A stretch of DNA of 64,000 bases, taken from Hyalangium minutum. GTDB lineage: Bacteria > Myxococcota > Myxococcia > Myxococcales > Myxococcaceae. Location of the stretch: the NCBI RefSeq assembly GCF_000737315.1, contig NZ_JMCB01000001.1:620001-684000 (forward strand), written 5' to 3'. Positions within the stretch are counted from its first letter, which is position 1; every line of letters begins with the position of its first letter. The notes under the pieces are model-generated. The model worked only from the letters and a program-made list of their open reading frames with translations. It made no database searches and was not told the DNA's origin. Below are positions 14,840 through 41,600 of this stretch, one piece after another. The position numbers and the translations under genes are program-made.

Positions 14840-16326
14840 CTAGTACTACTGTGTCATAAACGTTAGGCTTTGCCGGTGCCGGGGACGCCCCCGCACCACG
14901 GGCAGCAGGGGAGTCGTAGCAGCAGCATGCGTGCCTGACGGATCCTCTGGGTGGTGATGGACGCCGGGTTGTGGCGCTCGGGGCGCAGGGGCAGCACCCC
15001 GCACCTGGAAATCCGCGGGTATTGGAGCGGGGCGCAAGAAGGCAACAGGTGCCGGGGGGGAAGCCGAGCACGCTCGGCGGCGAGGAACGCGTAGGCGGCG
15101 ATGCAGAGCACTCCGTGATGGTGAAAGCCCCGCCACCCCCGGCCCTCGTAATGATCCAGGCCCAGCTCGTCCTTCAGTTCCTGGTAGTCGCGCTCGATGC
15201 GCCACCGAATCTTCACCAGGTAGATGAGTTCCTCCATGGCAGTGGCCTCCGGGACCGTGGATAGCCAGTACTTGGTGGGTTCCTTCTCCCCCTTGGGCCA
15301 CTCCACCAGGAGCCACTCGACAGCGCGCGGCTCTGAGCGGCCATAGTCGCGGTGGGCCGCACGTACACGCAGGCGGGCGAAGCGCGAGTGCATAGTCCCC
15401 TTGGTCCCCTCTCGCCAGTGCACGTTCTGCCACTGCTTGGCGGGCAGTCTCAGGGCCAAGTCCTTGACGGACACGGGCTCATGTCCGGGATGGCGCCGCA
15501 GCCTCTTGGGCGGGCGTCCCATGCCGCTGTAGGGCTTGGGCGATAATGGTTGCTGGGATGGGGTCCAGACTGAAGTCGAGGAGGCGATGCCGACAGCGTA
15601 GGAGAGGCCGCGTTCGGTGAGCGCCTCGCGAAAGGCTGTGACATCTCCGTAGCCCGCATCGGCCACCACGGGAGCCAGGGGCAGTTGCTCCGTCAGCAGT
15701 GCATCCACCTGCCCGAGGGCGATCTCCCACTTGGAGTGGATGTGCACCTGCCTCGGGATGCCTGCTGCCCTACGGCGAGCAGCATTCTCAGCCCAGGACT
15801 CCGGCAGGTAGAGGCGGTACGCGCTGGGCACTCTCAGGCTGTTGCACAGCGACAGCGTCACCACCACCTGGCAGTTATCCTGCTTGCCCAGAGGGCCACA
15901 GTACTGCCGCGCCACCCCGACCGAGTGGGTCCCCTTATTGGGCATGCCCGTATCGTCCACTACCCACGCTTCCACTGGGCCGTGCCTCTCCAACTGCTCG
16001 AGGGCATAGTCCCGGGCCACAGCCAGCATCGCTCTCTCGTCCCATGAGGACACGGCGACGAAGTGGTGCAGCGACTGGTGCCGCGCTCGGACGTGCGTCG
16101 GATCCAACTTCGCCGCCATCGGCTCCACGCTCTTGCGCTCGCCGGAGAGCAGCAGCCCCGTCAGGTAGCCGCGCAGTGGCGCCAGCCGATCCACGTGCCC
16201 GATAACAGCTCCCAGACGTTGGAGGTACCCCTCGAACCTCTCTTCAGGCGTGCTCGCTCGTACCGACATGGCTCGCAGTCCCTCCGGAGTCGGCAAAGCC
16301 TAACGTTTATGACACAGTAGTACTAG
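14840..16326. mobile_element. IS701-family insertion sequence with perfect terminal inverted repeats and CTAG target
   Basis: 14840-14875 ctagtactactgtgtcataaacgttaggctttgccg is the exact reverse complement of 16291-16326; CTAG at both ends. Confidence 0.92.
14863..16269 (-). CDS. IS701-family DDE transposase
   Basis: ERKSVEPMA, QSLHHFV, VDDTG.P.KG.HSVGVARQYCG.LGK..NCQ, ADAGYG, RW.IE..YQELK.ELGLDHYEGR.W.GFHHH. Confidence 0.92.
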   Translation of the reverse strand: MSVRASTPEERFEGYLQRLGAVIGHVDRLAPLRGYLTGLLLSGERKSVEPMAAKLDPTHVRARHQSLHHFVAVSSWDERAMLAVARDYALEQLERHGPVEAWVVDDTGMPNKGTHSVGVARQYCGPLGKQDNCQVVVTLSLCNSLRVPSAYRLYLPESWAENAARRRAAGIPRQVHIHSKWEIALGQVDALLTEQLPLAPVVADAGYGDVTAFREALTERGLSYAVGIASSTSVWTPSQQPLSPKPYSGMGRPPKRLRRHPGHEPVSVKDLALRLPAKQWQNVHWREGTKGTMHSRFARLRVRAAHRDYGRSEPRAVEWLLVEWPKGEKEPTKYWLSTVPEATAMEELIYLVKIRWRIERDYQELKDELGLDHYEGRGWRGFHHHGVLCIAAYAFLAAERARLPPRHLLPSCAPLQYPRISRCGVLPLRPERHNPASITTQRIRQARMLLLRLPCCPWCGGVPGTGKA

Positions 16327-19095: not shown

Positions 19096-22000
19096 CTAGC
19101 GCGTCACCGTCACGGTGACGGCCGTGCTGTAGACCGAGTTGCCGGCTCCATCATACGCCCGAGACCTCAGCGTGGTGTTGCCGATGGACACCTTCGTCGT
19201 GTCCCAGGACCAGGTGTACGGCGCCGTGGTGACGGAGCCCAGCAACAGCGAGCCCTGGTAGAACTCCACCTTGGTGATGGTCCCCCGGTCATCACTCGCG
19301 ATGGCGTCAATCTGCACCACCCCGGTGACCGTGGAGCCGCTGGCCGGCGAGGTGATGGACGTCGTGGGCGGCGTGAGATCGTTGTCGAAGATCACATTCA
19401 CGGGAGCCGAGGTCCCGATGTTGTTCAGGGTGTCGTACGCCTTGGCCGTGAGGACCTTGCTGCCATTGACCAGGAGCCGGGTGTTGTAGCTGAAGGAGTA
19501 CGGCGCCGTGGTGGCAGTGCCCACCTGCGTGGTGCCGGCGAAGTAGACCACCTTGGAGATCCCCGCTGCATCGCTGGCCGTGGCCGTGAAGACGACGGTA
19601 CCGGTCAGCGTCTCGCCCTCGGCCGGCGCGGTGAGTGTCACCGTGGGCGGCGTGAAGTCATTCTCGAAGGTCGCATTCACCGGCGCCGAGGTCCCCAGGT
19701 TGTTCAGCGTGTCATACGCCTTGGCCGTGAGGACCTTGGCCCCATTGGGCAGGAGCCGGGTGTTGTAGCTGAAGGAGTACGGCGCCGTGGCGTCGGAGCC
19801 CACCGCCGTGGTGCCGACGAAGAAGTCCACCCGGGCGATCCCCGCAGGATCGCTGGCCGTCGCCGTGAGGACGGCGGTGCCGCTCAGCGTCTCGCCCTCG
19901 GCCGGCGCGGTGAGTGTCACCGTGGGCGGCGTGAAGTCGTTCTCGAAGGTCACGTTCACCGGTGCGGAGGTGCCCATGTTGTTGACGGCGTCATACGCCG
20001 TGGCCGTGAGCACCTTGGCCCCGTTGGGCAGAAGCCGGGTGTTGTAGCTGAAGGAGTATGGCGCCGTGGTGTCGGAGCCCACCTGCGTGGTGCCAATGAA
20101 GAAGAGCACCCGGGTCACAGCCAGGTTATCGCTGGCCGTGGCCGTGAAGACGACGGTGCCTTTCAGGGGAGCGCCCTCGGCCGGCGCGGTGAGCGTCACC
20201 GTGGGCGGCGTGAAGTCGTTGTCGGCGTTCACCCGGACCTCGGCGGTGCCCACGTTGCCCCCGGCGTCATACGCCTTCGCGGTGAGCGTGCGATCACCGT
20301 TGGCGCCTGCACGCGTGTTCCAGTTGTAGGCGTACGGCGAGGAGGTGTCGGTGCCCAGCAACGTGCTGCCCTCGTAGAAATCGACGCGGGTGACTCCCAG
20401 GTTGTCTGTGGCCGTCGCGGTGACCGTGAGGGTGCCCGTCACGGTGGCCCCCTCCACGGGAGCGGAGATCGACACGGTGGGCGCGATCAGATCGTTGTCC
20501 ACCGTCACGTTCACCCCAGGCGAGGTGGAGGACTGCCCCAGGGCGTCATAGGCCTTCACGGTGAGCGAATGGGCGCCATTGCCCGCGGTTCTCGTGGCCC
20601 AGGAGAAGCTGTAGGGCGAGGCGGTGTCGGTCCCCAGCAGCGTGGCCCCGTCGTAGAACTCGACTCGGGTGACGGCCACGTTGTCGGTGGCTGTCGCGGA
20701 GAGCGTCACGGTCCCCTTCAGCGTCGCGCCCTCCACAGGCGCGGTGAGCGTCGCCGTGGGCGGCGTGAGGTCATTGTTGAAGGTCACACTCACCGCAGCG
20801 GAGGTGCCCACGTTGTTCAGGGTGTCATAGGCCTTCGCCGTGAGGGTCTTGGCCCCATTGGGCAGGTTCCGGGTGTTGTAGCCAAAGGAGTACGGCGCCG
20901 TGGTGGCAGTGCCCACCTGGAAGGTGTCGACGAAGAAATCCACCTTGGAGATCCCCGAGGTGTCGCTGGCCGTGGCGGTGAAGACGAGGTTCCCAGACAC
21001 GGTTGCGCCCTGGCGCGGCGCGGTGAGCGTCACCGTGGGCGGCGTGAGGTCATTGTCGAAGGTCACGTTCACCGTGGCGGAGGTGCCCAGGTTGAACAGG
21101 GTGTCATAGGCCTTCGCCGTGAGGGTCTTGGCCCCATTGGGCAGGAGCCGGGTGTCGTAGCTGAAGGAGTACGGCGCCGTGGTGGCAGAGCCCACCTGAG
21201 TGGAGCCGACGAAGAAATCCATCCGGGAGATCCCCGAGGGGTCGCTGGCCGTGGCCGTGAGGACGACGGTGCCGGTCAGCGTCGCACCCTGTCCCGGAGC
21301 GGTGAGCATCACCGTGGGCGGCGTGTAGTCATTGTCGAGGGTCACATTCACCGCTGCGGAAGTGCCCACGTTGTTCAGGGTGTCATACGCCTTGGCCGTG
21401 AGGCTCCAGGCCCCATTGAGCCGGCCCCGGGTGTTGTAGCTGAAGGAGTACGGGGCTGTGGAGTCGGTCCCCACCAGGATGGGGCCGAGGAAGAACTCCA
21501 CCTGGGAGATCCCCGAGGTGTCACTGGCCGTGGCCGTCAAGAGGACGGTGCCGCTCAGGGTCGCGCCCTCGGTTGGCGCGGTGAGCGTCACCGTGGGCGG
21601 CGTGAAGTCGTTGTTGGCCGTCACCGTCACCTGGGCAGTGGCCACGTTGCCCCCGGCGTCATACGCCTTCGCGGTGAGCGTGCGGTCACCGTTGGGGCCT
21701 GTGCGCGTGTTCCAGCTGTAGGCGTACGGCGAGGTGGTGCCCGTGGCCAGCAGCGTGCTGCCCTCGTAGAGCTCGACGCGGGCCACGCCCTGGTCGTCCG
21801 TGGCCATCGCGGTGACCGTGAGGGTGCCCGTCACAGCCGCCCCCGCGGCTGGGGCGGAGATCGACACGGTGGGAGCGATTAGATCATTGTCCACCGTCAC
21901 GTTCACCCCGGGCGAAGTGGCGGACTGCCCGCCGGCGTCATAGGCCTTCACGGTGAGCGAATGGGCGCCATTGCCCGCGGTTCTCGCATCCCAGGAGAAG

Positions 22001-24600
22001 CTGAAGGGTGCGGCGGTGTCGGTCCCCAGCAGCGTGGCCCCGTCGTAGAACTCGACTCGGGTGACGGCGACGTTGTCCAGGGCGGTCGCGGTGAGCGTTA
22101 CGATCCCCCTCAGCGTCGCGCCCTCTCCAGGCGCGGTGAGCGTCACCGTGGGCGGTACGGTGTCCGGCGCTGCGGCGATCTCGATCACCTTGGCGGAGGT
22201 CAGGCCGTTGACGGTGACGGACAACAGGTACTGCCCTGGGGGCGTTGGGGGCACGGTGGAGGTGACGTGCGTGCTCGAGAACCCCTGCGAGGGCAGCACG
22301 GCCAGCGTGCCTCTTTCAATGTCCAGCAACGTCAGGAAGGGGAAGTCGGAGGCAGAGGAGCGGCTACTGCCACCACTGGCTTCCGAGATGCCACGCAACA
22401 GCGAGCCATTCACGGTGAAGGAAGCGCCAGGGATGAGCGGAGCGCTCGCGGAGACACTGACAATGCCAGGCCGCCACAGAGGGTTGGAGCCCGTGTCGTC
22501 GTACAGCTCTACGGTGTCCTGGTCCCCCCCCATCACGAGCACCTGGCCCGAGGGCAGCAGCGTGACCATGGCGAAGGATCGGCCTTGAGAGAGCGAGGCG
22601 GTGTCCGTCCAGGAACCGGTGGCCGGGTCATACACTTCATGGATCGGTTCAGGCGAGGGACTGTACCCGCCCACCACGAGCACCTTGCCCGAGGGCAGCA
22701 GCGTCGCCCTGTTGCCGAAGCGGTCCTTACGGAGCGGAGCGATGTCCGTCCAGGAGCCGGTGGCCGGATCGTACACCTCGACCCTTGTGCCGCCGTTATA
22801 TCCACCCGCGACGAGCACCTTGCCCGAGGGCAGCAGCGTCGCCGTGGCGAGAAACCGAGGCAGAGCCAGTGAGCCCGTGACAGTCCATGAGCCCGAGCCC
22901 GGATCGTACACCTCGGCGCTGCTCAGGTAGCCGGAGGAAGACGCACCCTGGCCACAGACGACGAGCACCTTGCCCGAGGGCAGCAACGCCGCCGCATGCT
23001 TGCTCCGGGCCTGAGCGAGCGAGCCGGTGTTGGCCCAGGTACCGGTCACCGGGTCATACAGCTCGACGCTGTTCAGGTTGCCGCTGTTGTTGACTCCACC
23101 CGCGATGAGCACCGTGCCCGACGGCAGCAGCGTCGCCGTGTGGTAGGCCCGCGCCTGAGCGAGTGAGCCGGTGTCGGCCCAGCGATGGGTGGCTGGGTCA
23201 TACAGCTTGGCGCTGGTCGTGTAGCCGGAGTCGTTCCTCCCCCCCACGACGAGCACCTGGCCCGAAGGCAGCAGCGTCATCGTGTAGTCGTCCCGAGCCG
23301 GAGTGAATGGACCGGTGTCTGTCCAGCTGCCGTTGGCTGGGTCATACAGCTTGGAGTTGATGCTGTAATACCCATACCCCCCGAGGACGAGCACCTTGCC
23401 CGAGGGCAGCAGCGCCGCCTTCTTGCCGTTGTAACTCCCAGGAACCAACGTGCTCGTCCCAGAGCCGGCGGCCGGGTTGTACAGCTCCGCGCTGGCCAGA
23501 GCCCCGCTGGTGCCAGTGCCTCCCACCACCAGCACCTTGCCCGAAGGCAGCAGCGTCGCCGTGTGGAGGGCACGGGCTTGGAAGAGCGAAACGGAGGAAG
23601 CCCAGTAGCCGGAGGACGGGTCATACAGCTCGGCGCTGGTGAGGGCACCACTGGAGTCAGCACCGCCCGCCACGAGCACCCTGCCCGAGGGCAGCAATGT
23701 CGCCGTGGCATGGAAGCGGGCCTGAGCGAGCGAGACAGCGTCAGCCCAGGAACCGGTGACCGGATCATACAGCTCGGTGCGGGCCAGGGCTCCGTTGGGG
23801 CCAACGCCGCCCGCTACGAACACCTTGCCCGACGGCAGCAGCGTGGCCGTAGCGCCGGAGCGGGCCTGAGCGAGCGCGCCGGTGGCAGACCAGGCGCTGG
23901 TGGCCGGATCATACAGCTCGGCGCTGGCCAGGGCTCCGTTGGGGCCAGCGCCGCCCGTCACGAGCACCTGGCCCGAGGCCAGCAATGCCGCCGTGGCGTC
24001 GGAGCGGGCCTGGGTGAGCGAGCCGGTAACGGACCAGGAGCCGGTGACCGGGTCATAGAGTTCGGCGCTGTTCAGGGCACTGCTGGCGCCAACCCCCCCC
24101 ACGACGAGCACCTGGCCCGAGGCCAGCAGCGTCGCCGTGTGGCTCCCACGGGCCTCCACGAGAGAGCCGATGGTGGCCCAGGAGCCAGTGGCTGCATCAT
24201 AGAGCTCGGCGCTGGTGAGCGCGCCGTTGGGGCCCTCGCCTCCCACGATGAGCACCTTGCCCGAGGGCAGCAGCGTCGCGGTGTGGTTCTTGCGGGCCTG
24301 AGCGAGCGAGCCGGTCGAGCCCCACGCGTTGGTGACCGGGTCATACAACTCGGCGTGGGCCTGGGGGCCGCTGGAGCCGTCCCCGCCCGCAACGAGCACC
24401 TTGCCCGAGGGCAGCAGCGTGGTGGTGTGACCGCTCCTGGCAGAGGACAGAGAGGCCGGCATCTCCCAACCCGCTGCGACCAGCCGCGAGGACTGACGAT
24501 GGGCCGTGGCCTCACCCGGGGAACGCTCCGAGGAGGGACTGCACGAGCCAAGGACGAGGACGAGCGCGGCCGCCATGAGTGAAACGAAGGTTCGAAGCAT
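19096..24600 (-). CDS. Large lipoprotein: 14 Kelch repeats + 11 bacterial Ig-like repeats
   Basis: LGSC lipobox after ATG 24600; 14 x (T)LLPSG.VLV.GG; 11 x D..PPTV.LTAP...A.AYD...N. Confidence 0.85.
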   Translation of the reverse strand: MLRTFVSLMAAALVLVLGSCSPSSERSPGEATAHRQSSRLVAAGWEMPASLSSARSGHTTTLLPSGKVLVAGGDGSSGPQAHAELYDPVTNAWGSTGSLAQARKNHTATLLPSGKVLIVGGEGPNGALTSAELYDAATGSWATIGSLVEARGSHTATLLASGQVLVVGGVGASSALNSAELYDPVTGSWSVTGSLTQARSDATAALLASGQVLVTGGAGPNGALASAELYDPATSAWSATGALAQARSGATATLLPSGKVFVAGGVGPNGALARTELYDPVTGSWADAVSLAQARFHATATLLPSGRVLVAGGADSSGALTSAELYDPSSGYWASSVSLFQARALHTATLLPSGKVLVVGGTGTSGALASAELYNPAAGSGTSTLVPGSYNGKKAALLPSGKVLVLGGYGYYSINSKLYDPANGSWTDTGPFTPARDDYTMTLLPSGQVLVVGGRNDSGYTTSAKLYDPATHRWADTGSLAQARAYHTATLLPSGTVLIAGGVNNSGNLNSVELYDPVTGTWANTGSLAQARSKHAAALLPSGKVLVVCGQGASSSGYLSSAEVYDPGSGSWTVTGSLALPRFLATATLLPSGKVLVAGGYNGGTRVEVYDPATGSWTDIAPLRKDRFGNRATLLPSGKVLVVGGYSPSPEPIHEVYDPATGSWTDTASLSQGRSFAMVTLLPSGQVLVMGGDQDTVELYDDTGSNPLWRPGIVSVSASAPLIPGASFTVNGSLLRGISEASGGSSRSSASDFPFLTLLDIERGTLAVLPSQGFSSTHVTSTVPPTPPGQYLLSVTVNGLTSAKVIEIAAAPDTVPPTVTLTAPGEGATLRGIVTLTATALDNVAVTRVEFYDGATLLGTDTAAPFSFSWDARTAGNGAHSLTVKAYDAGGQSATSPGVNVTVDNDLIAPTVSISAPAAGAAVTGTLTVTAMATDDQGVARVELYEGSTLLATGTTSPYAYSWNTRTGPNGDRTLTAKAYDAGGNVATAQVTVTANNDFTPPTVTLTAPTEGATLSGTVLLTATASDTSGISQVEFFLGPILVGTDSTAPYSFSYNTRGRLNGAWSLTAKAYDTLNNVGTSAAVNVTLDNDYTPPTVMLTAPGQGATLTGTVVLTATASDPSGISRMDFFVGSTQVGSATTAPYSFSYDTRLLPNGAKTLTAKAYDTLFNLGTSATVNVTFDNDLTPPTVTLTAPRQGATVSGNLVFTATASDTSGISKVDFFVDTFQVGTATTAPYSFGYNTRNLPNGAKTLTAKAYDTLNNVGTSAAVSVTFNNDLTPPTATLTAPVEGATLKGTVTLSATATDNVAVTRVEFYDGATLLGTDTASPYSFSWATRTAGNGAHSLTVKAYDALGQSSTSPGVNVTVDNDLIAPTVSISAPVEGATVTGTLTVTATATDNLGVTRVDFYEGSTLLGTDTSSPYAYNWNTRAGANGDRTLTAKAYDAGGNVGTAEVRVNADNDFTPPTVTLTAPAEGAPLKGTVVFTATASDNLAVTRVLFFIGTTQVGSDTTAPYSFSYNTRLLPNGAKVLTATAYDAVNNMGTSAPVNVTFENDFTPPTVTLTAPAEGETLSGTAVLTATASDPAGIARVDFFVGTTAVGSDATAPYSFSYNTRLLPNGAKVLTAKAYDTLNNLGTSAPVNATFENDFTPPTVTLTAPAEGETLTGTVVFTATASDAAGISKVVYFAGTTQVGTATTAPYSFSYNTRLLVNGSKVLTAKAYDTLNNIGTSAPVNVIFDNDLTPPTTSITSPASGSTVTGVVQIDAIASDDRGTITKVEFYQGSLLLGSVTTAPYTWSWDTTKVSIGNTTLRSRAYDGAGNSVYSTAVTVTVTR

Positions 24601-24704
24601 GTTCCCCCCTGCTGGAATCGGACAGCCAAGCTGCACGAACGGCCCCTGCTTGTCCATGCCAATCCCGTCTGCTCGGCCCAGTCTCCTCGCGGCGTCTTCT
24701 CCTC

Positions 24705-25196
24705 CTACTTCTGCTCCAGGGCATCCGCCATGGGAGGCACTGCGGGAGCGGCCGTCCGGGTGGAGGTGGTGCTCATGGTGGTCGCCCCACGCGGGACTTG
24801 CATCGAGTTGCGCTCCACATAGAGCTGCGTGCACACCGAGTTGGACTTGTTCCACTGGAATCCCAGGTAGCTCGTGTCGTTGAGCGAGGTGATCAAATCC
24901 ACCACCGACTGCGGAGGATTGCTCAGGGTGCACCATCCCATGTTGTTCAAGGCGTCAACGGCCTGGCACGTGAGGGTCCGTGAAGGGGAGGCGGTGTTGA
25001 TGGCGTTCACCGTGATGTTGCAGACGATGGACTGCTTCGTGTCCGCCGAGTTCTGCGCCGCAGCGATGGTCCCTCCCGCGAAACCATAGTTGGGATTGGC
25101 CAGGTACACGCTCACGTCGTAATTGGCCCGGGCTCCCGCGCTGGCCGCCGTGGCGGCGGCAGTAAGCACCAGGAACAGCAGTTTGTGGGCTTTCAC
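24705..25196 (-). CDS. Secreted hypothetical protein with four Cys
   Basis: GTG start with AAGGGAG RBS, signal peptide (ARA-NY). Confidence 0.65.
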   Translation of the reverse strand: MKAHKLLFLVLTAAATAASAGARANYDVSVYLANPNYGFAGGTIAAAQNSADTKQSIVCNITVNAINTASPSRTLTCQAVDALNNMGWCTLSNPPQSVVDLITSLNDTSYLGFQWNKSNSVCTQLYVERNSMQVPRGATTMSTTSTRTAAPAVPPMADALEQK

Positions 25197-27266: not shown

Positions 27267-27391
27267 GGGCGCTCCTGGGGCGAGTGAGTCTGAGCATCGG
27301 AAAAATGAAGGCCCTCCCCCTTTTTCCTGGGCGTTTCTTAGGAGGGTGCATCGCCCTGCCGTACATTCCGCACGGCGGCAGGAGGTGAGGC

Positions 27392-28903
27392 TTGCTGAAT
27401 CGAACTCAGCGGCAGCAGATCTATCAGCAGCTCAATGCGATCGTCGCCACCGTGCGCGGCATCGACCCCGACGCCGCCGACGATCTCTCCGCGAGTGTCT
27501 ACTCCATGTCAGACGACGACCTGGAGTGGATTGCGCGCGAGGTCGTTCGCGGCGATGCGTACGGCTGGTTCTGGCAGGCGTCGTGGAAGGCCATGGCGCG
27601 CGCGTGGCTGCTGGTGGTGTTCGCCGGTGGTCCGCCACGGGGAGCCTATGACGAGCCGTCGCCCCAAGTGATGGCCGGCCACCTGAACTACCTGCGCACC
27701 GCCTCGGAGGCGACGCTGCGCGCCGGGATCGTCCATCGTATCCTCGACGCACAGACCGGGCGCGATGCCATCGCGGGGATCGTCCCGATGCTCACGGATG
27801 CGAGCCGTGATGCCTGGGATCCCAGCCTGTTCACCGATCCGACGCAGCACCGCGGCAATGCCTACCGGTACATCATCAACGCGCTCCGTCCGACCCGGAT
27901 CCAAGTCTCGGACGCGGCGGAGGTTCAGTACCTCCGCACCCACCGGTCGACGTTCATCGAGCCCGTCTCCGGCAACCCGAACGCCGTCGTGTATCACCTC
28001 ACCCGCTATTACCTGAGTGAACCGGATGCCTTGTGCTCGGAGGTCTTGAGCTGCTCGCTGATATCGCAGGCCAAGAAGACCACGTACCAGAACATGACGT
28101 TCGGCTTCGTCCTCTACGTGCCGAAGGCCAATATCTGCAACGCGGGCACGATCGATCTGGTGGCCGCCCAGGTGCAGAACACCGCGCGCGGAATGAACCT
28201 CTCGGGGCGGAGCACCTATCGCCGGACCCAGCGCATCACCGACTTCCTGTCCCAGCTCGGCGGGAAGGCGCGGCAGGTCATTCCCACGCCAGACCAGATC
28301 CTCACCGGCACCAGCGTGCATGGCCACAATGAGCTGATCGTCCTCGGCACCTTCATGGGGCAGGTGCGGGCACGTGCGCTGTTCGTCAAGGTGAGCAACG
28401 GGTGCCTGTGGCGGTCGTTCGTGGAGGACGACGTGAAACACAAGCTCACCGAGCTGATCTTCGCCTGCGCCCAGGCACGAAGAATTCCGGTGATCCCCAT
28501 TCGCGACGACTCCGGTGAAGCGTCGAAGATCAGCTTCCTCGATTGGTACAGGAATCGCTCGCTTCCTCGCGAGGAGCCACGGAGCGTGCAGTCCTCCATC
28601 CAGGCGGTGGTCTCGTCATCGAGAGAGCTGGTCGTCGACGATCGCTTTCCGAACGTCCAGCTGTCGATGGGGCAGGCGCGGGCGCTCCTTGCGCGCGAGC
28701 TGAACGTGTCTCCGTTCCTGGAACTCTCCGCGCTGCGCAGCACCTATCGCCGATTCGCCGTCACGCATCATCCGGACAAAACTGCTGACAAAGAGAAGCA
28801 GGCCAAATTCGTAGTCGTCCGCGGACTCCTGACCCTCATCGAGGGGGAGGAGACCGGGACGCGCGAGCCGCTCCCGATTGCGTGGAAGAAGCAGCTGGAC
28901 TGA
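27392..28903 (+). CDS. Hypothetical protein with possible ADP-ribosyltransferase-like core and C-terminal J-domain-like HPD motif
   Basis: AGGAGGT RBS before TTG; YRY...SCS...HNE motifs; C-terminal LRSTYRRFAVTHHPDK. Confidence 0.7.
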   Translation: MLNRTQRQQIYQQLNAIVATVRGIDPDAADDLSASVYSMSDDDLEWIAREVVRGDAYGWFWQASWKAMARAWLLVVFAGGPPRGAYDEPSPQVMAGHLNYLRTASEATLRAGIVHRILDAQTGRDAIAGIVPMLTDASRDAWDPSLFTDPTQHRGNAYRYIINALRPTRIQVSDAAEVQYLRTHRSTFIEPVSGNPNAVVYHLTRYYLSEPDALCSEVLSCSLISQAKKTTYQNMTFGFVLYVPKANICNAGTIDLVAAQVQNTARGMNLSGRSTYRRTQRITDFLSQLGGKARQVIPTPDQILTGTSVHGHNELIVLGTFMGQVRARALFVKVSNGCLWRSFVEDDVKHKLTELIFACAQARRIPVIPIRDDSGEASKISFLDWYRNRSLPREEPRSVQSSIQAVVSSSRELVVDDRFPNVQLSMGQARALLARELNVSPFLELSALRSTYRRFAVTHHPDKTADKEKQAKFVVVRGLLTLIEGEETGTREPLPIAWKKQLD

Positions 28904-31883: not shown

Positions 31884-32642
31884 TCAGCGTGGAGAGTCGC
31901 GTCCGCCGATCTTTGGGAAGCGCTCGTAGGCCCGCTTGAGCGCGTCCAGGTGGGCGGGGTTGTCATAATCGAGCGGCGCATCCGTGAGCTTCACAACCCA
32001 TCCGCCCGACGGCGTGCGCCGCGCCCGCGTGAGCAGTTCGGCGTCGCGAGCAGGATCCGGGAACCCGATGGCCTGCGCGGCAGCAGCAGACCAATAGTTC
32101 AACCACCCGAGGAAATAGGGAATCTCAGGCCCGGGGAGTTTTTCTGGAAGATTGAGCATGGGAAGCCCACGGGGTGAGCGCTCCGGCCCATGAGCGGAGC
32201 GGCGAAACTGGTCCCCGACTTCCGAGCCGTAACCATACCGGGACGCATGCCCCCAGAACGCGCGCGCCCCCTCCGCCACGGCCTCAAGCATAGCCTCCGC
32301 TGCCGAGATAACGGCCTCGTCTAGCGGCAACTCCGCATGAACTTGGAGCTGCGGCTGACCGCCCGGGCTGAAGAGTACCGAGCTTTCCCTGCCGTTCACC
32401 GTCACGGGGTAACTCTCGTCCCCGTTGCACAGAAGAGGGAATCTCCCGTCCTGCGTCCTTTCCACGAGCCACGCGTCGCGATGCGGCAATGCGATGGGGC
32501 GCCCTCCTTCGGAGATCCTCCACGCCAAGCGCAAACCGGGAAGTGCTTTTTCCATCCCATGGATGACATCGAGCGTACGGCCGTCTTTGCTCACGAGCGC
32601 AGGCGCGTAGACGATGAGGGTGAGGGCTCTGGGCTTGGTCAT
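31884..32642 (-). CDS. Putative immunity protein (DUF5953-like), paralog 2
   Basis: ATGA overlap with upstream toxin; paralog of 11222-11980. Confidence 0.7.
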   Translation of the reverse strand: MTKPRALTLIVYAPALVSKDGRTLDVIHGMEKALPGLRLAWRISEGGRPIALPHRDAWLVERTQDGRFPLLCNGDESYPVTVNGRESSVLFSPGGQPQLQVHAELPLDEAVISAAEAMLEAVAEGARAFWGHASRYGYGSEVGDQFRRSAHGPERSPRGLPMLNLPEKLPGPEIPYFLGWLNYWSAAAAQAIGFPDPARDAELLTRARRTPSGGWVVKLTDAPLDYDNPAHLDALKRAYERFPKIGGRDSPR

Positions 32643-33556
32643 CGTATGCACCCCGTAACGACGATATTGAGTTCGGGAAGCGCTTCGCGCAGCGCGTCTT
32701 TGTGCGCTTGCGTGCTCACCCCAACGACGAAGTCGTATCCACAGGCCCGCGCAGCGCCGAGTTCCTTCTTCAATTGCTCCACCGCCTTCTCAAGCTCCCG
32801 CCTCCGGATAAAGTCAGGATAGGTGTCAAATCGGTGGGTCTTGATCTCCCACAGCACGCGCACACCGACTTGCAGCGCATCGAAGCGCTCACCGCCCACG
32901 AATACGTCCATGCCGGGGTAACGGTTGGGCGGAAACTTATCGGCGCACTCATTATGCGGGACATCTCCGCCCGCGTGCCGCACCGGGATGGGCTCGCACG
33001 ACGGACGGCGCGGCGTGGTTTCTGGCGGTGGGGGGAACATGTCTCCGGAGGGTGATCCCTTTGGCTTTGGCGTTCGGTTCGCTAACGGTTCCTGAGCGGG
33101 CTGCGTTTGAGCCTGGGGCTTCGCGCGCTCGCGGGATGCGTTCCGTTGATAAGCATCAATCCCCTCTTGGATGGCGGCGGCCACCACCACCGCACCAACA
33201 ACAATCACTGCACCGACGACGATCTCGGGTGCCGCAAAGACACAGAGGGCCACGACTGCGGGAGCGGCTGCATCCGCGTAGGCGACAGCGCATCTTTTGG
33301 TGACATCCCGGAACCTGACCCTGTCGCGATCAAGAGCGTGAAAGCACCGCTCCGCAAGGATCGGCCACTCGTTGGAGGCTTCCCTCACCACGCAATGCCC
33401 GTCATCCGTCCACGGGTACTGCGCCGCCCGCTGAAGGTTGGCGAATCTCGGACTCTGGGGACTCGGGTCCTCCAGCTCTCCCGGGCTCGGATCCATCGTG
33501 GCGCAGGCCGAGAGCAGGATCAGGATCAGGGGGACGGTCCAAGTTCGCGAACGCAT
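32639..33556 (-). CDS. Polymorphic lipoprotein toxin (SitA-like; DUF6310-like), paralog 2
   Basis: LSAC lipobox; conserved N-terminus with 10318-11220; C-terminal FDAL...LWEIK. Confidence 0.75.
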   Translation of the reverse strand: MRSRTWTVPLILILLSACATMDPSPGELEDPSPQSPRFANLQRAAQYPWTDDGHCVVREASNEWPILAERCFHALDRDRVRFRDVTKRCAVAYADAAAPAVVALCVFAAPEIVVGAVIVVGAVVVAAAIQEGIDAYQRNASRERAKPQAQTQPAQEPLANRTPKPKGSPSGDMFPPPPETTPRRPSCEPIPVRHAGGDVPHNECADKFPPNRYPGMDVFVGGERFDALQVGVRVLWEIKTHRFDTYPDFIRRRELEKAVEQLKKELGAARACGYDFVVGVSTQAHKDALREALPELNIVVTGCIR

Positions 33557-38638: not shown

Positions 38639-41600
38639 TTATTCCTGCCCGTCTCCGTTGGAGGTGCCCGCAGGCCCCCCCACGGTGGGGACCGAGCTGC
38701 TCGGCCCGTTGGAGCCGGGCGGCGCCCCAGCGGCCCCAGGAATAGGAGCCAAGGTGGGTGGACGGGCCGGAGCGGCCACGGGCCTCCGAGCGACTGTAGC
38801 CGAGGCCAACGCTCCGGGGCCCGGCTTGAGGACGGGAGCCGCCGGAGCCGTTCCGGCTACGGGGGGCCGGGTCGCCGGGCTCCCTGGAATCGGAGGGAGC
38901 GTCGCGGGCTTCCGGGCCGGATCAGGCTTGGCGGCAATCGGGGCTGGCGTGGGTCGGGTGCCGACCGTGGGCTTGGGCGGGGTGGCCAAGGGCGCGGGGG
39001 TGGGACGCGCGGACTGCGGAACCGTCGTGGGCTTGGCGACCGCAGCGGCTTTGGGCCGGGCCATGGTCTCTCGCAGCTCCTTCAGCTCCGCCTCAAGCTT
39101 CTCGCGCTCGCTCTTGAGCCGCTCCAGCTCCTCGGCCATGGCGGGATCGACAGCGGGCGTCTTGCCTGCCTCGGCCTCTTCCAAGCGGGCCGTGAGTCCG
39201 CGGATCTGGGTCTCGAGCCGGCTCTGGTCCTCCAGGAGGATCCGCTTCTCCGCGCCGAGGCTCTCCACCGCCTCGCGCAGCAGAGGCATCTCCGCCTGGA
39301 GCGTCGCGAGGCGCTCCTGGGCCTCCTTCTCGCGCTGCTTCGCGGCCTGGGCCGCCTCCTGGGCCTCTCTCTCGCGCTGCTGGGCCGCCGCCAGGGCCTC
39401 GGCGGTCTCCTTCTCGCGCTGCTGGAGCGTCTCCTGAGCCCCTTCCGCGGCCTGGGACTGGCGCGAGCGCTCGGCCTTCTCGGTCTCGAGCTGCCGCGCC
39501 GTCTCCACCGTCGCGCTCTCCAGGCTCGCAACCTTCCCTTCCAGCCGCACGCGGGCCGCCTTCGCCACGGTCAGCTCCGACTGGAGCCGCTCCCGCTCAG
39601 CCACCACGCTCGCACGCTCGGCCTCGATGCGGCTGAGGCGCTCCTGCTCGGTCCGGAGTGTCTCGTTGCTCTTGGCCAGCTCGGCGCGGGCGGACTCCAG
39701 CGCCGCCAGTTCGGTTTCGAGGCGACCGATGCGCTCCTGTCCTGTCCGCAGCGCCTCCTGCGCCTGGACGAGCTCGCCGCGCACCGTCTCCAGGGCGGCC
39801 GCGCCTTCCTTCTCGAAGCGCCCGCTCCGCTCCTGCTCCTCGCGCAGCGCCTCCTGAACCTTGGCCAGCTCGGCGCGAGCGGCCTCCAGATCGGTGCGAG
39901 CAGCCTCCAGCGCCGAGCGCTCGGCCTCCAACGAGGCCTCCGCCACGGAGGCACGTCCCGCGAACCGCCGAGCGGACTCGAGCTGGACTCCGAGCAGTTC
40001 CACCTGCTCGTGCTCCGCCAGGAGGCGGGCGCGGGCGTCGTTCAGCTCGCCCTCCATCTGGGCGATGTGGAAGTCGCGCTGCTGGAGCGCCTGGAGCATG
40101 CGCTGCAGCTCCATGCCCAGCCGCATGATCTCGGCGCGAGCAGCCTCGAACTGGGCCACACCGGCCAGGAGGCTCTGGCGCTCGGTCTCCCACGCGGCCT
40201 CGCGCTCGCGAGCCGTAGCCCGCTCCTGCTCCCGCGCCGCGTCGCTCTCCTCGCCGCGCGTGGTGAGCTGCCGGGCCTGATCCTCGACCGCCGCAAGGGA
40301 CTGCTCCAGCGCGGCCACCCGGGCACGCTGCTCCTCCAGGGCCGCGAGCTGCTCCCGCGAGGAGCCCTCCACCGCGCTCTTCTCGGCCTCCAGACGCTCC
40401 AGGGAGGCACGCAGCTCCTTCTCGCGGGCCTCGGCCGCCGAGAGGCTCTCGGCGCTCGCGCCACGCTCCTGCTCCACGAGCGTCTTCAGCTCCGCCATCG
40501 AGCGCTGCTGCTCCGCCAGCTGGGCGTTGAGCGTCTCCAGCTCGGTGCGAAGCTGGGCCGCCGCCTCGCGTTCGGAGTCCCAGCCCTTCCGAGCCTCCGA
40601 GAGCAACGCGGCGATCTGCTCGCGCTCCTGCTGTTCGGTGTCCAGGCGCTCCTGGGCCTCTGCGAGCGACGCCTCGATCGCCTCGCGCTCCTTCCGCTCT
40701 GTCGCGAACGCCGCCCGAAGCTCCGCGAGCCCCGCCTCCCCAGCGGACCGGCCCTGGCGCTCGGCCGCGAGCTCCGCGCGGACACCCGACAGCTCCTCAT
40801 CGAGCCGGGTGTGGGCCTCGCGCTCCGTCGCCAGCTCGGCGCGGACTTCTTCGAGCACGGTGCCCAGCCGCTTCTGCTCCTGTCCTGCCGTCTCGAGCTC
40901 GGTCCGAGCCTGGGAGAGGGATGTCTCCGCCTGAGCGCGCTGCTCCTGCTCCGCCGCGAAGCCCGAGCGGAGCTGGACCAGCAGCTCGTCAGCCTCCAGG
41001 CGCCGCTGCCGCTCCGCGCCGAGCGCGCCCTGAACCGCCGCGAGGGCCTCCGCGTCCTGAGAGCGCCCGCTCTGCTCCGAGTCGAGCCGGGTCCGCAGCT
41101 CCGCGAGCGCCTCTTCGAGCCGGGCCCGCTCCTGGCGCTCGGTGGCCAGCTCCCCGCGCAGCGTCGCGGAGGCCTCGTCGGTCCGAGCGCGCTGCCCCTG
41201 CTCCTCGGTCAGGGCGGTCCGGAGCTGCTCCAGCATCGTATCGACTTGAGCGCGCCGAGCCTGCTCCGCCTCCAGCGCCGCACGAGCCTCCACCCGTGCA
41301 GCGTCGGACTGAGCACGCTGATGCCGCTCGCCCTCGAGCTCCGTGCGAACCTGGGCCAGCGCTTCCCCTGACCGAGCACGCTCTCCGCGCTCGGTCTCCA
41401 GGGTTGCGCGGACCTCCGCCAGCTCCGTATCGAGCTGGGCCCGCCCTTGCCGCTCCGCCTCGAGCGCCTCACCCGTCCGAACCGCCAGCGCCTCGGCCGC
41501 GGTCCAGGAGTCACGCGTACTCAGCAGCTCCGCCTGGAGGCCGGCCAGTGCCTGCCGCACCTCTTCACGCCGCTGCCCTTCGGCGGCCAATTCAGCTCGC

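What the first reader, a model, noticed from the sequence alone, without database searches (positions are those of the whole stretch)
27392..28903. Novel protein fusing an ADP-ribosyltransferase-like core to a C-terminal J-domain
Seen: central motifs AYRYII, VLSCSLIS, FGFVL.VP..NI and GHNELIV; C-terminal LRSTYRRFAVTHHPDKTADKEKQAKF; no signal peptide. Knowledge: the HPD motif after a basic helix is the DnaJ signature that stimulates Hsp70, and R-S-E ARTs use Y/R, SxS and a catalytic Glu in this order. Inference: an Hsp70-activated or Hsp70-targeting toxin, effector or anti-phage protein, co-mobilised with a GMC oxidoreductase. The ART assignment is tentative.
Basis: partly seen in the sequence, partly recalled or inferred. 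Interest (0 to 1): 0.72.

Follow-up and report, generated by a model that had tools for sequence, protein, structure and literature searches.

The report
Unknown enzyme domain with J-domain tail
A myxobacterial gene encodes a protein that joins a confidently folded, enzyme-like domain with no known relatives to a real Hsp70-recruiting J-domain; it looks like a new effector or toxin module aimed at the Hsp70 chaperone, but it is not a recognisable ADP-ribosyltransferase.

Summary
The ORF 27392-28903 (+), 503 aa, is a real gene. It has an AGGAGG ribosome-binding site, GC3 of 0.84, and homologues at 45-89% identity.

The C-terminus is a genuine J-domain. A profile of nine homologous tails hits only J-domains in the PDB (best E 8.5e-9), the model superposes on J-domains, and the HPD motif is intact.

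The central ~250 residues belong to a rare, unannotated superfamily. There are 160 representatives among 1.84 billion proteins, and none has a Pfam or NCBIfam hit for this domain. AlphaFold gives a very confident model (pLDDT 97, pTM 0.93), yet Foldseek finds no neighbour in the PDB or BFVD, and no ART.

The proposed ART arginine is not conserved (62 of 103). S220, S222, N313 and E314 are nearly invariant, and W142, G238 and D255 are invariant. Relatives carry Sec signal peptides, eCIS-loading (DUF4157) domains, FYVE-like fingers or other tails in place of the J-domain.

Best reading: a modular effector or toxin-type enzyme of unknown chemistry, docked on Hsp70/DnaK by its J-domain. ART membership and co-mobilisation with the GMC oxidoreductase are not supported.

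The parts
27380..27385 (+). Shine-Dalgarno sequence AGGAGG, 6 nt upstream of the TTG start codon
   Evidence: Read directly from the sequence.
27392..28903 (+). Complete gene, 503 codons plus stop. Domain order: N-terminal helical domain, conserved core, linker, J-domain.
   Evidence: ORF list. GC3 is 0.843. Homologues P0002-P0008 share 45-89% identity.
27392..27754 (+). N-terminal all-helical domain, aa 1-121. Function unknown. Shared only by the closer relatives.
   Evidence: The AF2 full-length model shows helices 4-24, 26-37, 41-57, 63-79, 91-103 and 106-134, with pLDDT mostly 67-86 (one 10-residue block at 51). Most of the closest representatives cover it (profile positions 1-383). No Pfam or PDB hit.
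27755..28567 (+). Conserved enzyme-like core, aa 122-392 (conserved part about 135-385). The fold has no detectable known neighbour.
   Evidence: AF2 with 103 sequences gives pLDDT 97.1 and pTM 0.93. Foldseek finds no hit at E <= 1e-3 in the PDB or BFVD. 160 representatives at E <= 1e-3 among 1.84 billion proteins. No Pfam family for the core in 148 members.
27815..27817 (+). W142, invariant in 103 of 103 relatives. It sits in the motif R..W.P..FTDP..H....[FY]R[Y].
   Evidence: Column counts on alignment A4.
27863..27871 (+). It is not conserved.
   Evidence: R in 62 of 103, C in 10, K in 7, other residues in the rest. P0003 and P0004 read YCY.
28049..28057 (+). S220-C221-S222, the S-x-S motif on a beta strand. 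The two serines are nearly invariant; the middle residue varies.
   Evidence: S220 in 96 of 103 (5 Cys). S222 in 97 of 103 (6 Thr). Strand 218-225 in the model.
28154..28156 (+). D255, invariant. Candidate catalytic or ligand-binding carboxylate.
   Evidence: Present in 103 of 103.
28328..28333 (+). N313-E314 at the start of a beta strand. Best candidate catalytic pair.
   Evidence: N in 98 of 103. E in 102 of 103, plus 1 Asp. Strand 314-318 in the model. H312 is not conserved outside the close clade.
28568..28660 (+). Flexible linker, aa 393-423. Poorly conserved.
   Evidence: pLDDT about 26-34. Variable and gapped in alignment A1.
28661..28855 (+). J-domain, aa about 424-488: helix I 426-437, helix II 445-459, helix III 467-488.
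   Evidence: Pfam DnaJ matches aa 437-476 at E 4.7e-5 for the whole protein and 27.5 bits for the tail alone. Tail profile against the PDB: best E 8.5e-9, all 50 hits are J-domains. Foldseek probability 1.00. Helices.
28769..28777 (+). H460-P461-D462, the HPD motif between helices II and III.
   Evidence: H and D are invariant in 9 tails. P is replaced by S only in P0005. It aligns to the HPD of E. coli DnaJ.

Best explanation
The gene encodes a cytoplasmic, stand-alone, modular protein with four parts: an N-terminal helical domain, a ~250-residue enzyme-like core, a disordered linker of about 30 residues, and a canonical J-domain.

**Shown.**
- The core belongs to an uncharacterised superfamily with invariant W142, G238 and D255, and near-invariant S220, S222, N313 and E314.
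- The J-domain has an intact HPD and DnaJ-like helix II and III residues.
- The same core occurs elsewhere behind Sec signal peptides, behind the eCIS cargo-loading domain DUF4157, or followed by other C-terminal modules such as a FYVE-like zinc finger or an unannotated helical tail.

**Inferred.**
- The core is a catalytic effector or toxin-type domain. It is probably a hydrolase or transferase that uses the D255 and E314 carboxylates, with N313, the two serines and the tryptophan shaping the substrate pocket.
- The interchangeable C-terminal modules act as targeting devices.
- In this clade the J-domain docks the enzyme onto ATP-bound Hsp70/DnaK. The tethered core could then act on Hsp70 itself, on an Hsp70-bound client, or be handled by Hsp70.

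The chemistry and the substrate remain unknown.
For: **Core domain**
- Very confident fold: pLDDT 97.1, pTM 0.93.
- Polar residues are invariant or nearly so across 103 relatives at only 21-39% identity outside the close clade.
- Rare but real superfamily: 160 hits at E <= 1e-3, 31 at E <= 1e-30.

**Delivery contexts of relatives**
- N-terminal eCIS_core/DUF4157 in P0133 and P0108, E 2e-31 and 1.5e-27. DUF4157 marks eCIS toxins whose toxin domain is C-terminal (PMC8213781).
- About 30 of 155 representatives have Sec-type signal peptides.

**Swapped C-terminal modules**
- Modules follow clades of the core tree: J-domain, FYVE-like, 'tail B', or none.
- A divergent member, P0016, also has a J-like tail with HPD.

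**J-domain**
- Evidence: - Y452, R453, R454, H460, P461, D462, K463 and F473 align to DnaJ Y25, K26, R27, H33, P34, D35, R36 and F47. The role of these DnaJ residues in binding DnaK is from my knowledge of the DnaJ-DnaK complex 5NRO.

**Precedents**
- The T3SS effector HopI1 has a C-terminal J-domain that binds Hsp70 and stimulates its ATPase (PMC8150971).
- A Legionella kinase inhibits Hsp70 by phosphorylating T495 (PMC13215673 abstract).
Against: - No biochemical function can be assigned. There is no fold neighbour and no family hit.
- No immunity-like gene is conserved next to the gene in any of about 12 loci. That is unusual for a toxin active on bacteria.
- The window protein has no secretion signal, and no secretion system is encoded nearby.
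- Only 2 of 148 relatives carry a known toxin-delivery domain.
- The J-domain lacks a clear helix IV, and the window's own Pfam score is marginally below the curated threshold.
- One homologue, P0005, has HSD instead of HPD.
- The gene has native composition and sits among ordinary chromosomal genes. This fits a housekeeping role equally well.
Confidence: 0.4

Rival explanations
1. The core is a divergent R-S-E ADP-ribosyltransferase with R159, S220-x-S222 and E314, which uses NAD+ to modify Hsp70 or another target.
For: - The linear order of elements resembles C3/iota-type ARTs: an aromatic-R-aromatic strand, a helix, an h-S-x-S-h-I strand, an hhhh-x-h-P strand, and an N-E-hhh strand. Many distant relatives literally read ISTSLI. 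The comparison with ART motifs rests on my knowledge.
- S220, S222 and E314 are nearly invariant.
- Some eCIS toxins are ARTs (PMC8213781).
Against: - The pLDDT 97 model has no ART among its Foldseek hits. The best ART-related entry is DarTG 7omu at E 1.1, TM 0.12.
- Profiles A2 and A4 against all PDB sequences, which include the solved ARTs, give nothing.
- No ART Pfam family is hit in 148 members.
- R159 is replaced in 41 of 103 relatives, including the close J-domain homologues.
- The residue two positions before E314 is variable, and the preceding residue is an invariant Asn instead of the [QE]-x-E pattern.
- About 60 residues of helices lie where the short ARTT loop would be.
Confidence: 0.08
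2. A non-toxic, specialised class-C J-domain co-chaperone of the producer. The core binds or processes a particular endogenous client or metabolite and hands it to DnaK, for example in stress or development. It has no role in antagonism.
For: - Stand-alone chromosomal gene with native GC and GC3, no immunity partner and no secretion signal.
- From my knowledge, bacterial J-proteins with a C-terminal J-domain and a specialised partner domain are well known (DjlA), and myxobacteria encode many Hsp70 and J paralogues.
Against: - The same core occurs as eCIS cargo and as a Sec-exported protein.
- Most relatives have no J-domain at all. The core's function is therefore not intrinsically tied to the chaperone.
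- The patchy, very rare distribution is unlike a housekeeping factor.
Confidence: 0.2
3. The J-domain acts in cis in the producer. It recruits the producer's own DnaK to keep the effector unfolded, inactive or secretion-competent until export, instead of targeting the victim's Hsp70.
For: - No immunity gene is present, so some self-protection mechanism is needed if the core is toxic.
- A flexible linker separates the core from the J-domain.
Against: - No secretion signal or nearby secretion apparatus.
- Alternative tails such as the FYVE-like finger look like target-cell localisation modules, not producer-side chaperone handles.
Confidence: 0.15
4. An anti-phage abortive-infection effector, possibly accessory to type III CRISPR-Cas, that monitors or poisons DnaK during infection.
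For: - Homologue P0003 lies 195 bp downstream of cmr6 in a cmr2-3-4-5-6 operon, in two metagenome contigs.
- Single-gene units in variable contexts.
- Host DnaJ can mediate phage sensing by bNACHT25 (PMC12169576).
Against: - The Cmr adjacency is confined to one lineage. The closely related L018/P0004 locus lacks it.
- No CARF or SAVED-type sensor domain, and no PADLOC hit.
- No defence genes next to the window gene.
- No phage, plasmid or viral-contig homologues.
Confidence: 0.07

Closest known systems
HopI1 (Pseudomonas syringae type III effector with a C-terminal J-domain)
   Same: An effector-type protein whose C-terminal J-domain, with HPD, engages Hsp70 and stimulates its ATPase. The rest of the protein provides the specific function (PMC8150971).
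   Different: No sequence relation outside the J-domain. HopI1 has no known catalytic domain and is secreted by a T3SS into plant cells. The window protein has a conserved enzyme-like core and no recognised secretion signal.
Canonical bacterial J-domain proteins (DnaJ, CbpA, DjlA)
   Same: J-domain fold, HPD motif and helix II/III residues. These are the best sequence and structure matches: 1bqz, 5nro and 3ucs. From my knowledge, DjlA also carries its J-domain at the C-terminus.
   Different: No G/F region, zinc-finger or client-binding domains as in DnaJ and CbpA, and no membrane anchor as in DjlA. The partner domain is an unannotated enzyme-like fold. Helix IV is not evident.
R-S-E ADP-ribosyltransferase toxins (C3, iota/VIP2, cholera-toxin type)
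   Same: Same linear order of an aromatic-Arg strand, an S-x-S strand and a Glu-initiated strand. Many relatives contain 'ISTSLI'.
   Different: Fold not matched. Arg not conserved. N-E in place of [QE]-x-E. A large helical insertion. No ART family or sequence hit.
eCIS-associated toxins with an N-terminal DUF4157 (EATs)
   Same: Two distant relatives, P0133 and P0108, have exactly this architecture: DUF4157, then a linker, then this core as the C-terminal toxin position (PMC8213781).
   Different: The window protein has no DUF4157 and no eCIS locus nearby. Its own N-terminal domain is a different helical module.
Hsp70-targeting effector enzymes (Legionella kinase LegK4)
   Same: The concept of a bacterial enzyme that modifies Hsp70 to disable it (PMC13215673 abstract).
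   Different: LegK4 is a protein kinase without a J-domain. Here Hsp70 as the substrate is only inferred from the J-domain.

Membership tests
J-domain (Pfam PF00226, DnaJ) | Significant match to the family profile | tested here: met
   Whole protein scores 23.8 bits, E 4.7e-5. The isolated tail scores 27.5 bits against the 27.8-bit cut-off. 8 of 9 homologous tails match, best E 4.4e-8. The tail profile against the PDB gives 50 hits, all J-domains, best E 8.5e-9.
J-domain (Pfam PF00226, DnaJ) | His-Pro-Asp tripeptide in the loop between helices II and III | tested here: met
   H460-P461-D462 lies between predicted helices 445-459 and 467-488 and aligns to the DnaJ HPD.
J-domain (Pfam PF00226, DnaJ) | Compact helical J-fold | tested here: met
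   Foldseek of the full-length model: 5nro_B at TM 0.70, rmsd 3.3 A; 3ucs_D at rmsd 1.7 A; 7jtk_y at TM 0.72. Probability 1.00 for each. Local pLDDT is 73-83. Helix IV is not evident.
J-domain (Pfam PF00226, DnaJ) | Binds Hsp70 and stimulates its ATPase | not testable with these tools
   Needs a DnaK ATPase assay and pull-down with an H460Q control.
R-S-E ADP-ribosyltransferases | Conserved NAD-binding Arg on strand beta-1 | tested here: not met
   R159 is present in 62 of 103 relatives. It is Cys in P0003 and P0004, and Val, Lys, Thr or Leu in others.
R-S-E ADP-ribosyltransferases | S-T-S motif on strand beta-2 | tested here: met
   S220 in 96 of 103 and S222 in 97 of 103, on a predicted strand. 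This is a motif-level match only.
R-S-E ADP-ribosyltransferases | Catalytic Glu in a [QE]-x-E motif after the ARTT loop | tested here: inconclusive
   E314 is present in 102 of 103. However, the -2 position is variable (H, Y, W, K and others), the -1 position is an invariant Asn, and the preceding segment is about 60 residues of helices.
R-S-E ADP-ribosyltransferases | ART fold (split beta-sheet NAD+ cleft) | tested here: not met
   Foldseek of the pLDDT 97 model against 350,542 PDB chains gives no hit at E <= 1e-3 and no ART among the listed matches except DarTG at E 1.1, TM 0.12.
R-S-E ADP-ribosyltransferases | NAD+-dependent ADP-ribosyl transfer | not testable with these tools
   Needs NAD+ consumption and labelling assays.
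Papain-like or NlpC/P60-type Cys-His hydrolases | Conserved catalytic Cys and His | tested here: not met
   C221 and H312 are conserved only in the close clade. Distant relatives read STS, SAS or SSS at the first site and YNE, WNE or KNE at the second.
PD-(D/E)xK nucleases | D ... (D/E)-x-K motif on adjacent strands, and the restriction-endonuclease fold | tested here: not met
   D255 and E314 are conserved, but position 316 is hydrophobic. K333 is present in only 69 of 103. Matches to viral endonucleases are at noise level, E around 1 and TM around 0.13.
eCIS-associated toxins (DUF4157 cargo) | N-terminal DUF4157, or location in an eCIS operon | tested here: not met
   Absent from the window protein and its neighbours. 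Present in the distant relatives P0133 and P0108.
Type III CRISPR-Cas accessory effectors | Conserved linkage to cas10/csm/cmr genes and a cyclic-oligoadenylate sensor (CARF/SAVED) | tested here: not met
   Cmr adjacency is seen only for P0003. It is absent in the window and in all other loci. No CARF/SAVED or PADLOC hit.

The most novel reading that the evidence does not exclude
The core is a previously undescribed enzyme fold that covalently modifies or cleaves Hsp70/DnaK, or clients held by it. It would use its own J-domain as the substrate-recognition device. This would be the first toxin or effector family that exploits the J-domain/Hsp70 docking reaction to find its target. The same catalytic module would be redeployed through eCIS particles, Sec export and FYVE-like membrane targeting in other lineages.
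Probability: 0.2. Interest if true: 0.85.

Novelty: new variant of a known kind. Interest (0 to 1): 0.55.

Why it matters
- **A new domain family.** J-domain proteins are defined by what they bring to Hsp70. Here the partner is a confidently folded domain with an invariant polar constellation (W, S-x-S, D, N-E). It has no Pfam or NCBIfam family and no solved or viral structural neighbour, so it is a candidate new enzyme fold.
- **A likely offensive or effector role.** The core is also found as eCIS cargo, as a Sec-exported protein, and with FYVE-like tails.
- **A possible new targeting principle.** If the J-domain is the targeting device, this would be a new way for toxins to select Hsp70, a central proteostasis hub. 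It would also offer a compact natural tool for directing an enzyme to Hsp70.
- **Value even if it is a housekeeping co-chaperone.** It would still define a new J-protein class in myxobacteria.

Tried and rejected
**Family and sequence searches with no result for the core**
- ART membership was rejected on fold, on the non-conserved Arg and on the absence of any profile hit.
- Pfam, NCBIfam, PADLOC and PHROGs scans of the whole protein returned only the J-domain.
- PDB sequence searches with the single protein and with profiles A2 and A4 returned nothing for the core. The only match was a non-significant resemblance of the last helix-strand element to eS12 (E 0.4-0.9).

**Alternative catalytic classes**
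- Papain-like Cys/His hydrolase: suggested by 'SCS' and 'GHNE', rejected because C221 and H312 are not conserved outside the close clade.
- PD-(D/E)xK nuclease: prompted by noise-level BFVD hits, rejected because there is no E-x-K motif and TM is about 0.13.
- Ser-His-Asp or SGNH hydrolase: rejected because no His is invariant.

**Structure prediction**
- The first AF2 run, full length with 8 sequences, was poor in the core (pLDDT below 50 for aa 214-326). It was useful only for the N-terminal and J-domains.

**Genomic context and distribution**
- Co-mobilisation with the GMC oxidoreductase is not seen in any homologous locus.
- CRISPR type III-B linkage occurs in one lineage only.
- tblastn against plasmids and phages found nothing.
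- The viral-contig scan found no relative.
- The metagenome scan found only L017, which is the same locus as L001, and L018.
- The genome-contig scan with A4 failed because the alignment had no conserved stretch usable for patterns. With A2 it found only one Myxococcaceae MAG.
- The second word-indexed homologue search, with A4, added only P0157 and P0158.

**Literature and annotation**
- Searches for J-domain toxins, J-domain defence systems and DUF6310/DUF5953 found no description of this family.
- The NCBI copy of the Myxococcaceae homologue is annotated 'hypothetical protein' (RYZ43329.1).

**Not done**
Full report
**1. The observation**

All the quoted peptide motifs are present:
- AYRYII at aa 157-162
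- VLSCSLIS at aa 218-225
- FGFVLYVPKANI at aa 237-248
- GHNELIV at aa 311-317
- ALRSTYRRFAVTHHPDKTADKEKQAKF at aa 447-473, with HPD at aa 460-462

In a 65-67% GC window, long spurious ORFs are common; a 310-aa antisense ORF overlaps this one. I therefore checked that this frame is the coding one.
- AGGAGG lies 6 nt before the TTG.
- GC by codon position is 0.63/0.45/0.84, the same signature as the flanking GMC oxidoreductase and carboxylesterase genes. The antisense ORF has its GC excess in position 1.
- Seven other proteins from metagenomes share 45-89% identity over the full length, with long invariant blocks.

There is no N-terminal hydrophobic segment.

**2. The C-terminus is a J-domain**

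- On its own the window protein matches Pfam DnaJ at 23.8 bits (E 4.7e-5). The isolated tail scores 27.5 bits, just under the 27.8-bit curated cut-off.
- Eight of nine homologous tails match DnaJ, best E 4.4e-8.
- A profile of the nine tails searched against all PDB sequences returns 50 hits. Every one is a J-domain, led by E. coli DnaJ at E 8.5e-9.
- In the full-length AlphaFold model the region forms helices 426-437, 445-459 and 467-488 at pLDDT 73-83.
- Foldseek's best hits for that model are J-domains at probability 1.00, TM 0.6-0.72 (normalised to the target) and rmsd 1.7-3.3 A. They include the DnaJ J-domain bound to DnaK, 5nro_B.
- In the tool alignments, Y452-R453-R454, H460-P461-D462-K463 and F473 correspond to DnaJ Y25-K26-R27, H33-P34-D35-R36 and F47. 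From my knowledge of the DnaJ-DnaK complex, these are the residues that contact DnaK.

Two caveats apply. A fourth helix is not evident, and one homologue (P0005) reads HSD.

**3. The central domain**

Word-indexed searching found only eight family members among 5.8 billion clusters. An exhaustive profile search without the J-domain, against 1.84 billion representatives, found 160 proteins at E <= 1e-3 and 31 at E <= 1e-30.

The shared unit is aa ~135-385 of the window protein. Across 103 relatives, most only 21-39% identical to the window protein:
- W142, G238 and D255 are invariant.
- P150, S220, S222, P244, P300, N313, E314, G319 and P366 are present in at least 90%.

The consensus reads R..W.P..FTDP..H....FRY.VH ... 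hS.S.I......T....GFIL.VP..NI..A...D ... L..P..IL..T.....NEV.V.G ... GIF.KV ... PIV.I.

None of 148 members hits any Pfam family in this region. NCBIfam, PADLOC and PHROGs are also silent. NCBI calls the one GenBank copy 'hypothetical protein'.

With the 103-sequence alignment, AlphaFold2 gives an exceptionally confident alpha/beta model: mean pLDDT 97.1, pTM 0.93. Foldseek nevertheless finds nothing at E <= 1e-3 in 350,542 PDB chains. The best hits are tautomerase-type and Hsp90 N-domain entries at probability <= 0.11 and TM 0.1-0.2. BFVD gives nothing either. Profile searches against all PDB sequences are empty apart from a non-significant eS12-like helix-strand match.

**4. Is it an ADP-ribosyltransferase?**

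The order aromatic-R-aromatic strand, helix, S-x-S strand, hhhh.hP strand, N-E-hhh strand mirrors C3/iota-type toxins, and many distant relatives even read ISTSLI.

The defining features fail when tested:
- The arginine (R159) is present in only 62 of 103 relatives. It is cysteine in the J-domain-bearing homologues P0003 and P0004.
- The Glu is preceded by an invariant Asn and a variable residue, not the [QE]-x-E pattern.
- About 60 residues of helices occupy the place of the short ARTT loop.
- The confident model has no ART neighbour. DarTG appears at E 1.1, TM 0.12.
- No solved ART or ART family is reached by profile or HMM searches.

I therefore do not file it as an ART. ART-like chemistry, meaning cleavage of a glycosidic bond by a carboxylate with Ser and aromatic helpers, remains one of several possibilities for a D/E/N/S/W active site.

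Other classes were also rejected:
- Cys-His hydrolases, because C221 and H312 are conserved only in the close clade.
- PD-(D/E)xK nucleases, because there is no E-x-K.
- Ser-His-Asp hydrolases, because no His is invariant.

**5. What the relatives say**

The J-domain is restricted to the window's own clade (P0001-P0008) and to the divergent P0016.

Other close relatives fall into four groups:
- They stop right after the core, for example P0009 on a 34-kb contig and P0157 in a 7.2-Mb contig.
- They carry a conserved unannotated ~50-residue tail (..QVHRxLHD..GIPHxV..LGHRDYL).
- They carry a FYVE-like zinc finger, at 22-24 bits, below threshold.
- They carry other tails.

In a rough neighbour-joining tree of the core, tail types follow clades. 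The FYVE-like protein is sister to the main J-clade, and P0016 branches next.

Among distant relatives:
- Two have an N-terminal eCIS_core/DUF4157 domain, E 2e-31 and 1.5e-27. This is the marker of toxins loaded into extracellular contractile injection systems, with the toxin domain at the C-terminus (PMC8213781).
- About 30 of 155 have typical Sec signal peptides (heuristic).

One catalytic module combined with several delivery or localisation modules is the hallmark of effector or toxin domains.

**6. Genomic context**

In the window the gene is divergent from a GMC oxidoreductase and convergent with a carboxylesterase. Further neighbours are a DUF6310 lipoprotein/DUF5953 pair, Ser/Thr kinases, response regulators and giant secreted repeat proteins. 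This is an ordinary myxobacterial chromosome region. The gene's composition is native.

About a dozen homologous loci show no conserved neighbour, no GMC gene and no candidate immunity gene.

One homologue (P0003) follows a type III-B cmr2-6 operon, but its close relative in L018 does not. Only about 100 nt upstream of the start codon are conserved between the two loci. The gene therefore behaves as a self-contained unit, and the CRISPR linkage looks incidental.

There are no homologues in plasmids, phages or viral contigs. Among 185,579 species-representative genomes only one Myxococcaceae MAG carries it.

**7. Most likely mechanism**

Shown:
- A genuine J-domain is tethered by a disordered linker (pLDDT ~26-34) to a conserved enzyme-like domain.
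- That domain's relatives are exported or injected.

Inferred:
- The core is catalytic, with D255 and E314 as candidate catalytic carboxylates, and N313, S220, S222 and W142 lining the site.
- The C-terminal modules are targeting devices.
- In this clade the J-domain docks the enzyme on ATP-bound Hsp70/DnaK, so the core acts on Hsp70 or on a bound client, or is handled by Hsp70.

Precedents are the J-domain effector HopI1 (PMC8150971) and the Hsp70-inactivating Legionella kinase (PMC13215673). I put this at about 0.4.

The rivals are:
- a non-toxic specialised co-chaperone (0.2)
- a cis-acting J-domain for self-handling in the producer (0.15)
- a true ART (0.08)
- an anti-phage effector (0.07)

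The main weaknesses are the missing immunity gene, the missing secretion signal and the unknown chemistry.

**8. Novelty and verdict**

J-domain proteins with specialised partner domains, and effectors with J-domains, are known kinds. This is a new variant whose partner is an unannotated domain with no detectable structural neighbour.

The finding is real and moderately interesting. The headline 'ART-J-domain fusion' should be replaced by 'unknown enzyme-like effector domain with a J-domain tail'. Interest 0.55.

Noticed in passing
window 31884-33556 (-): A lipoprotein (signal/lipobox LLSAC) with a C-terminal DUF6310 domain, at 32639-33556, overlaps by 13 nt the downstream DUF5953 gene at 31884-32651. 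Both are families of unknown function. The arrangement resembles a toxin-immunity pair. A literature search on these DUFs found nothing.
   Followed up: partly
window 19096-24936 (-): A 1946-aa secreted protein made of Kelch-like repeats followed by about ten Ig-like repeats. It is encoded by 279-bp tandem repeats (8-10 copies, 74-76% matches) and 144-bp repeats.
   Followed up: no
window 14863-16296 (-): A DDE_5/DDE_Tnp_1 transposase (E 8e-82), the only mobile-element gene seen. It lies 11 kb from the finding and is not adjacent to it.
   Followed up: no
L001 773-6345 and L002 (homologue P0003 at L001 6540-8084): A complete-looking type III-B CRISPR-Cas effector operon (cmr2/cas10, cmr3, cmr4, cmr5, cmr6) ends 195 bp upstream of the J-domain homologue on the same strand. 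The related locus L018 does not share this.
   Followed up: partly
L001 ~6440-6540 versus L018 ~3220-3320: About 100 nt immediately upstream of the start codon are conserved between two homologous loci whose upstream genes are unrelated. This suggests the gene travels with its own promoter or 5' leader.
   Followed up: no
Proteins P0010, P0012, P0015, P0017, P0023, P0024 (C-terminal ~50 aa): A conserved, unannotated C-terminal module (..REY...IR..AQ.LL..G.TP.QVHR.LHD..GIPH.V.E.VLN.LGHRDYL) replaces the J-domain in another clade of the family. It has no Pfam hit.
   Followed up: partly
Proteins P0021 and P0033 (C-terminal ~85 aa): Cys-rich tails match the FYVE zinc finger over the whole model, at 22-24 bits against a 27.8-bit cut-off. 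From my knowledge, FYVE is a PI3P-binding module typical of eukaryotes. P0021 is on a bacterial-looking contig next to merC.
   Followed up: partly
Proteins P0058, P0073, P0092, P0110, P0144, P0153 and about 25 others: Short (214-260 aa) distant members consist of a Sec-type signal peptide plus the core domain, often with a conserved Cys just after the predicted cleavage site (..Q/S/D-V-G-C).
   Followed up: partly
window 38639-43903 (-): A 1754-aa ORF in the most GC-rich part of the window (71-73% GC). It has only an N-terminal methyltransferase domain recognised, and internal 42-96-bp tandem repeats.
   Followed up: no
window protein aa ~330-370 (28379-28501): The last strand-helix-strand element of the core (..LTELIFACAQARRIPVIPI..) repeatedly gives a weak, non-significant match to ribosomal protein eS12 of the L7Ae-like family (E 0.4-0.9).
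   Followed up: no
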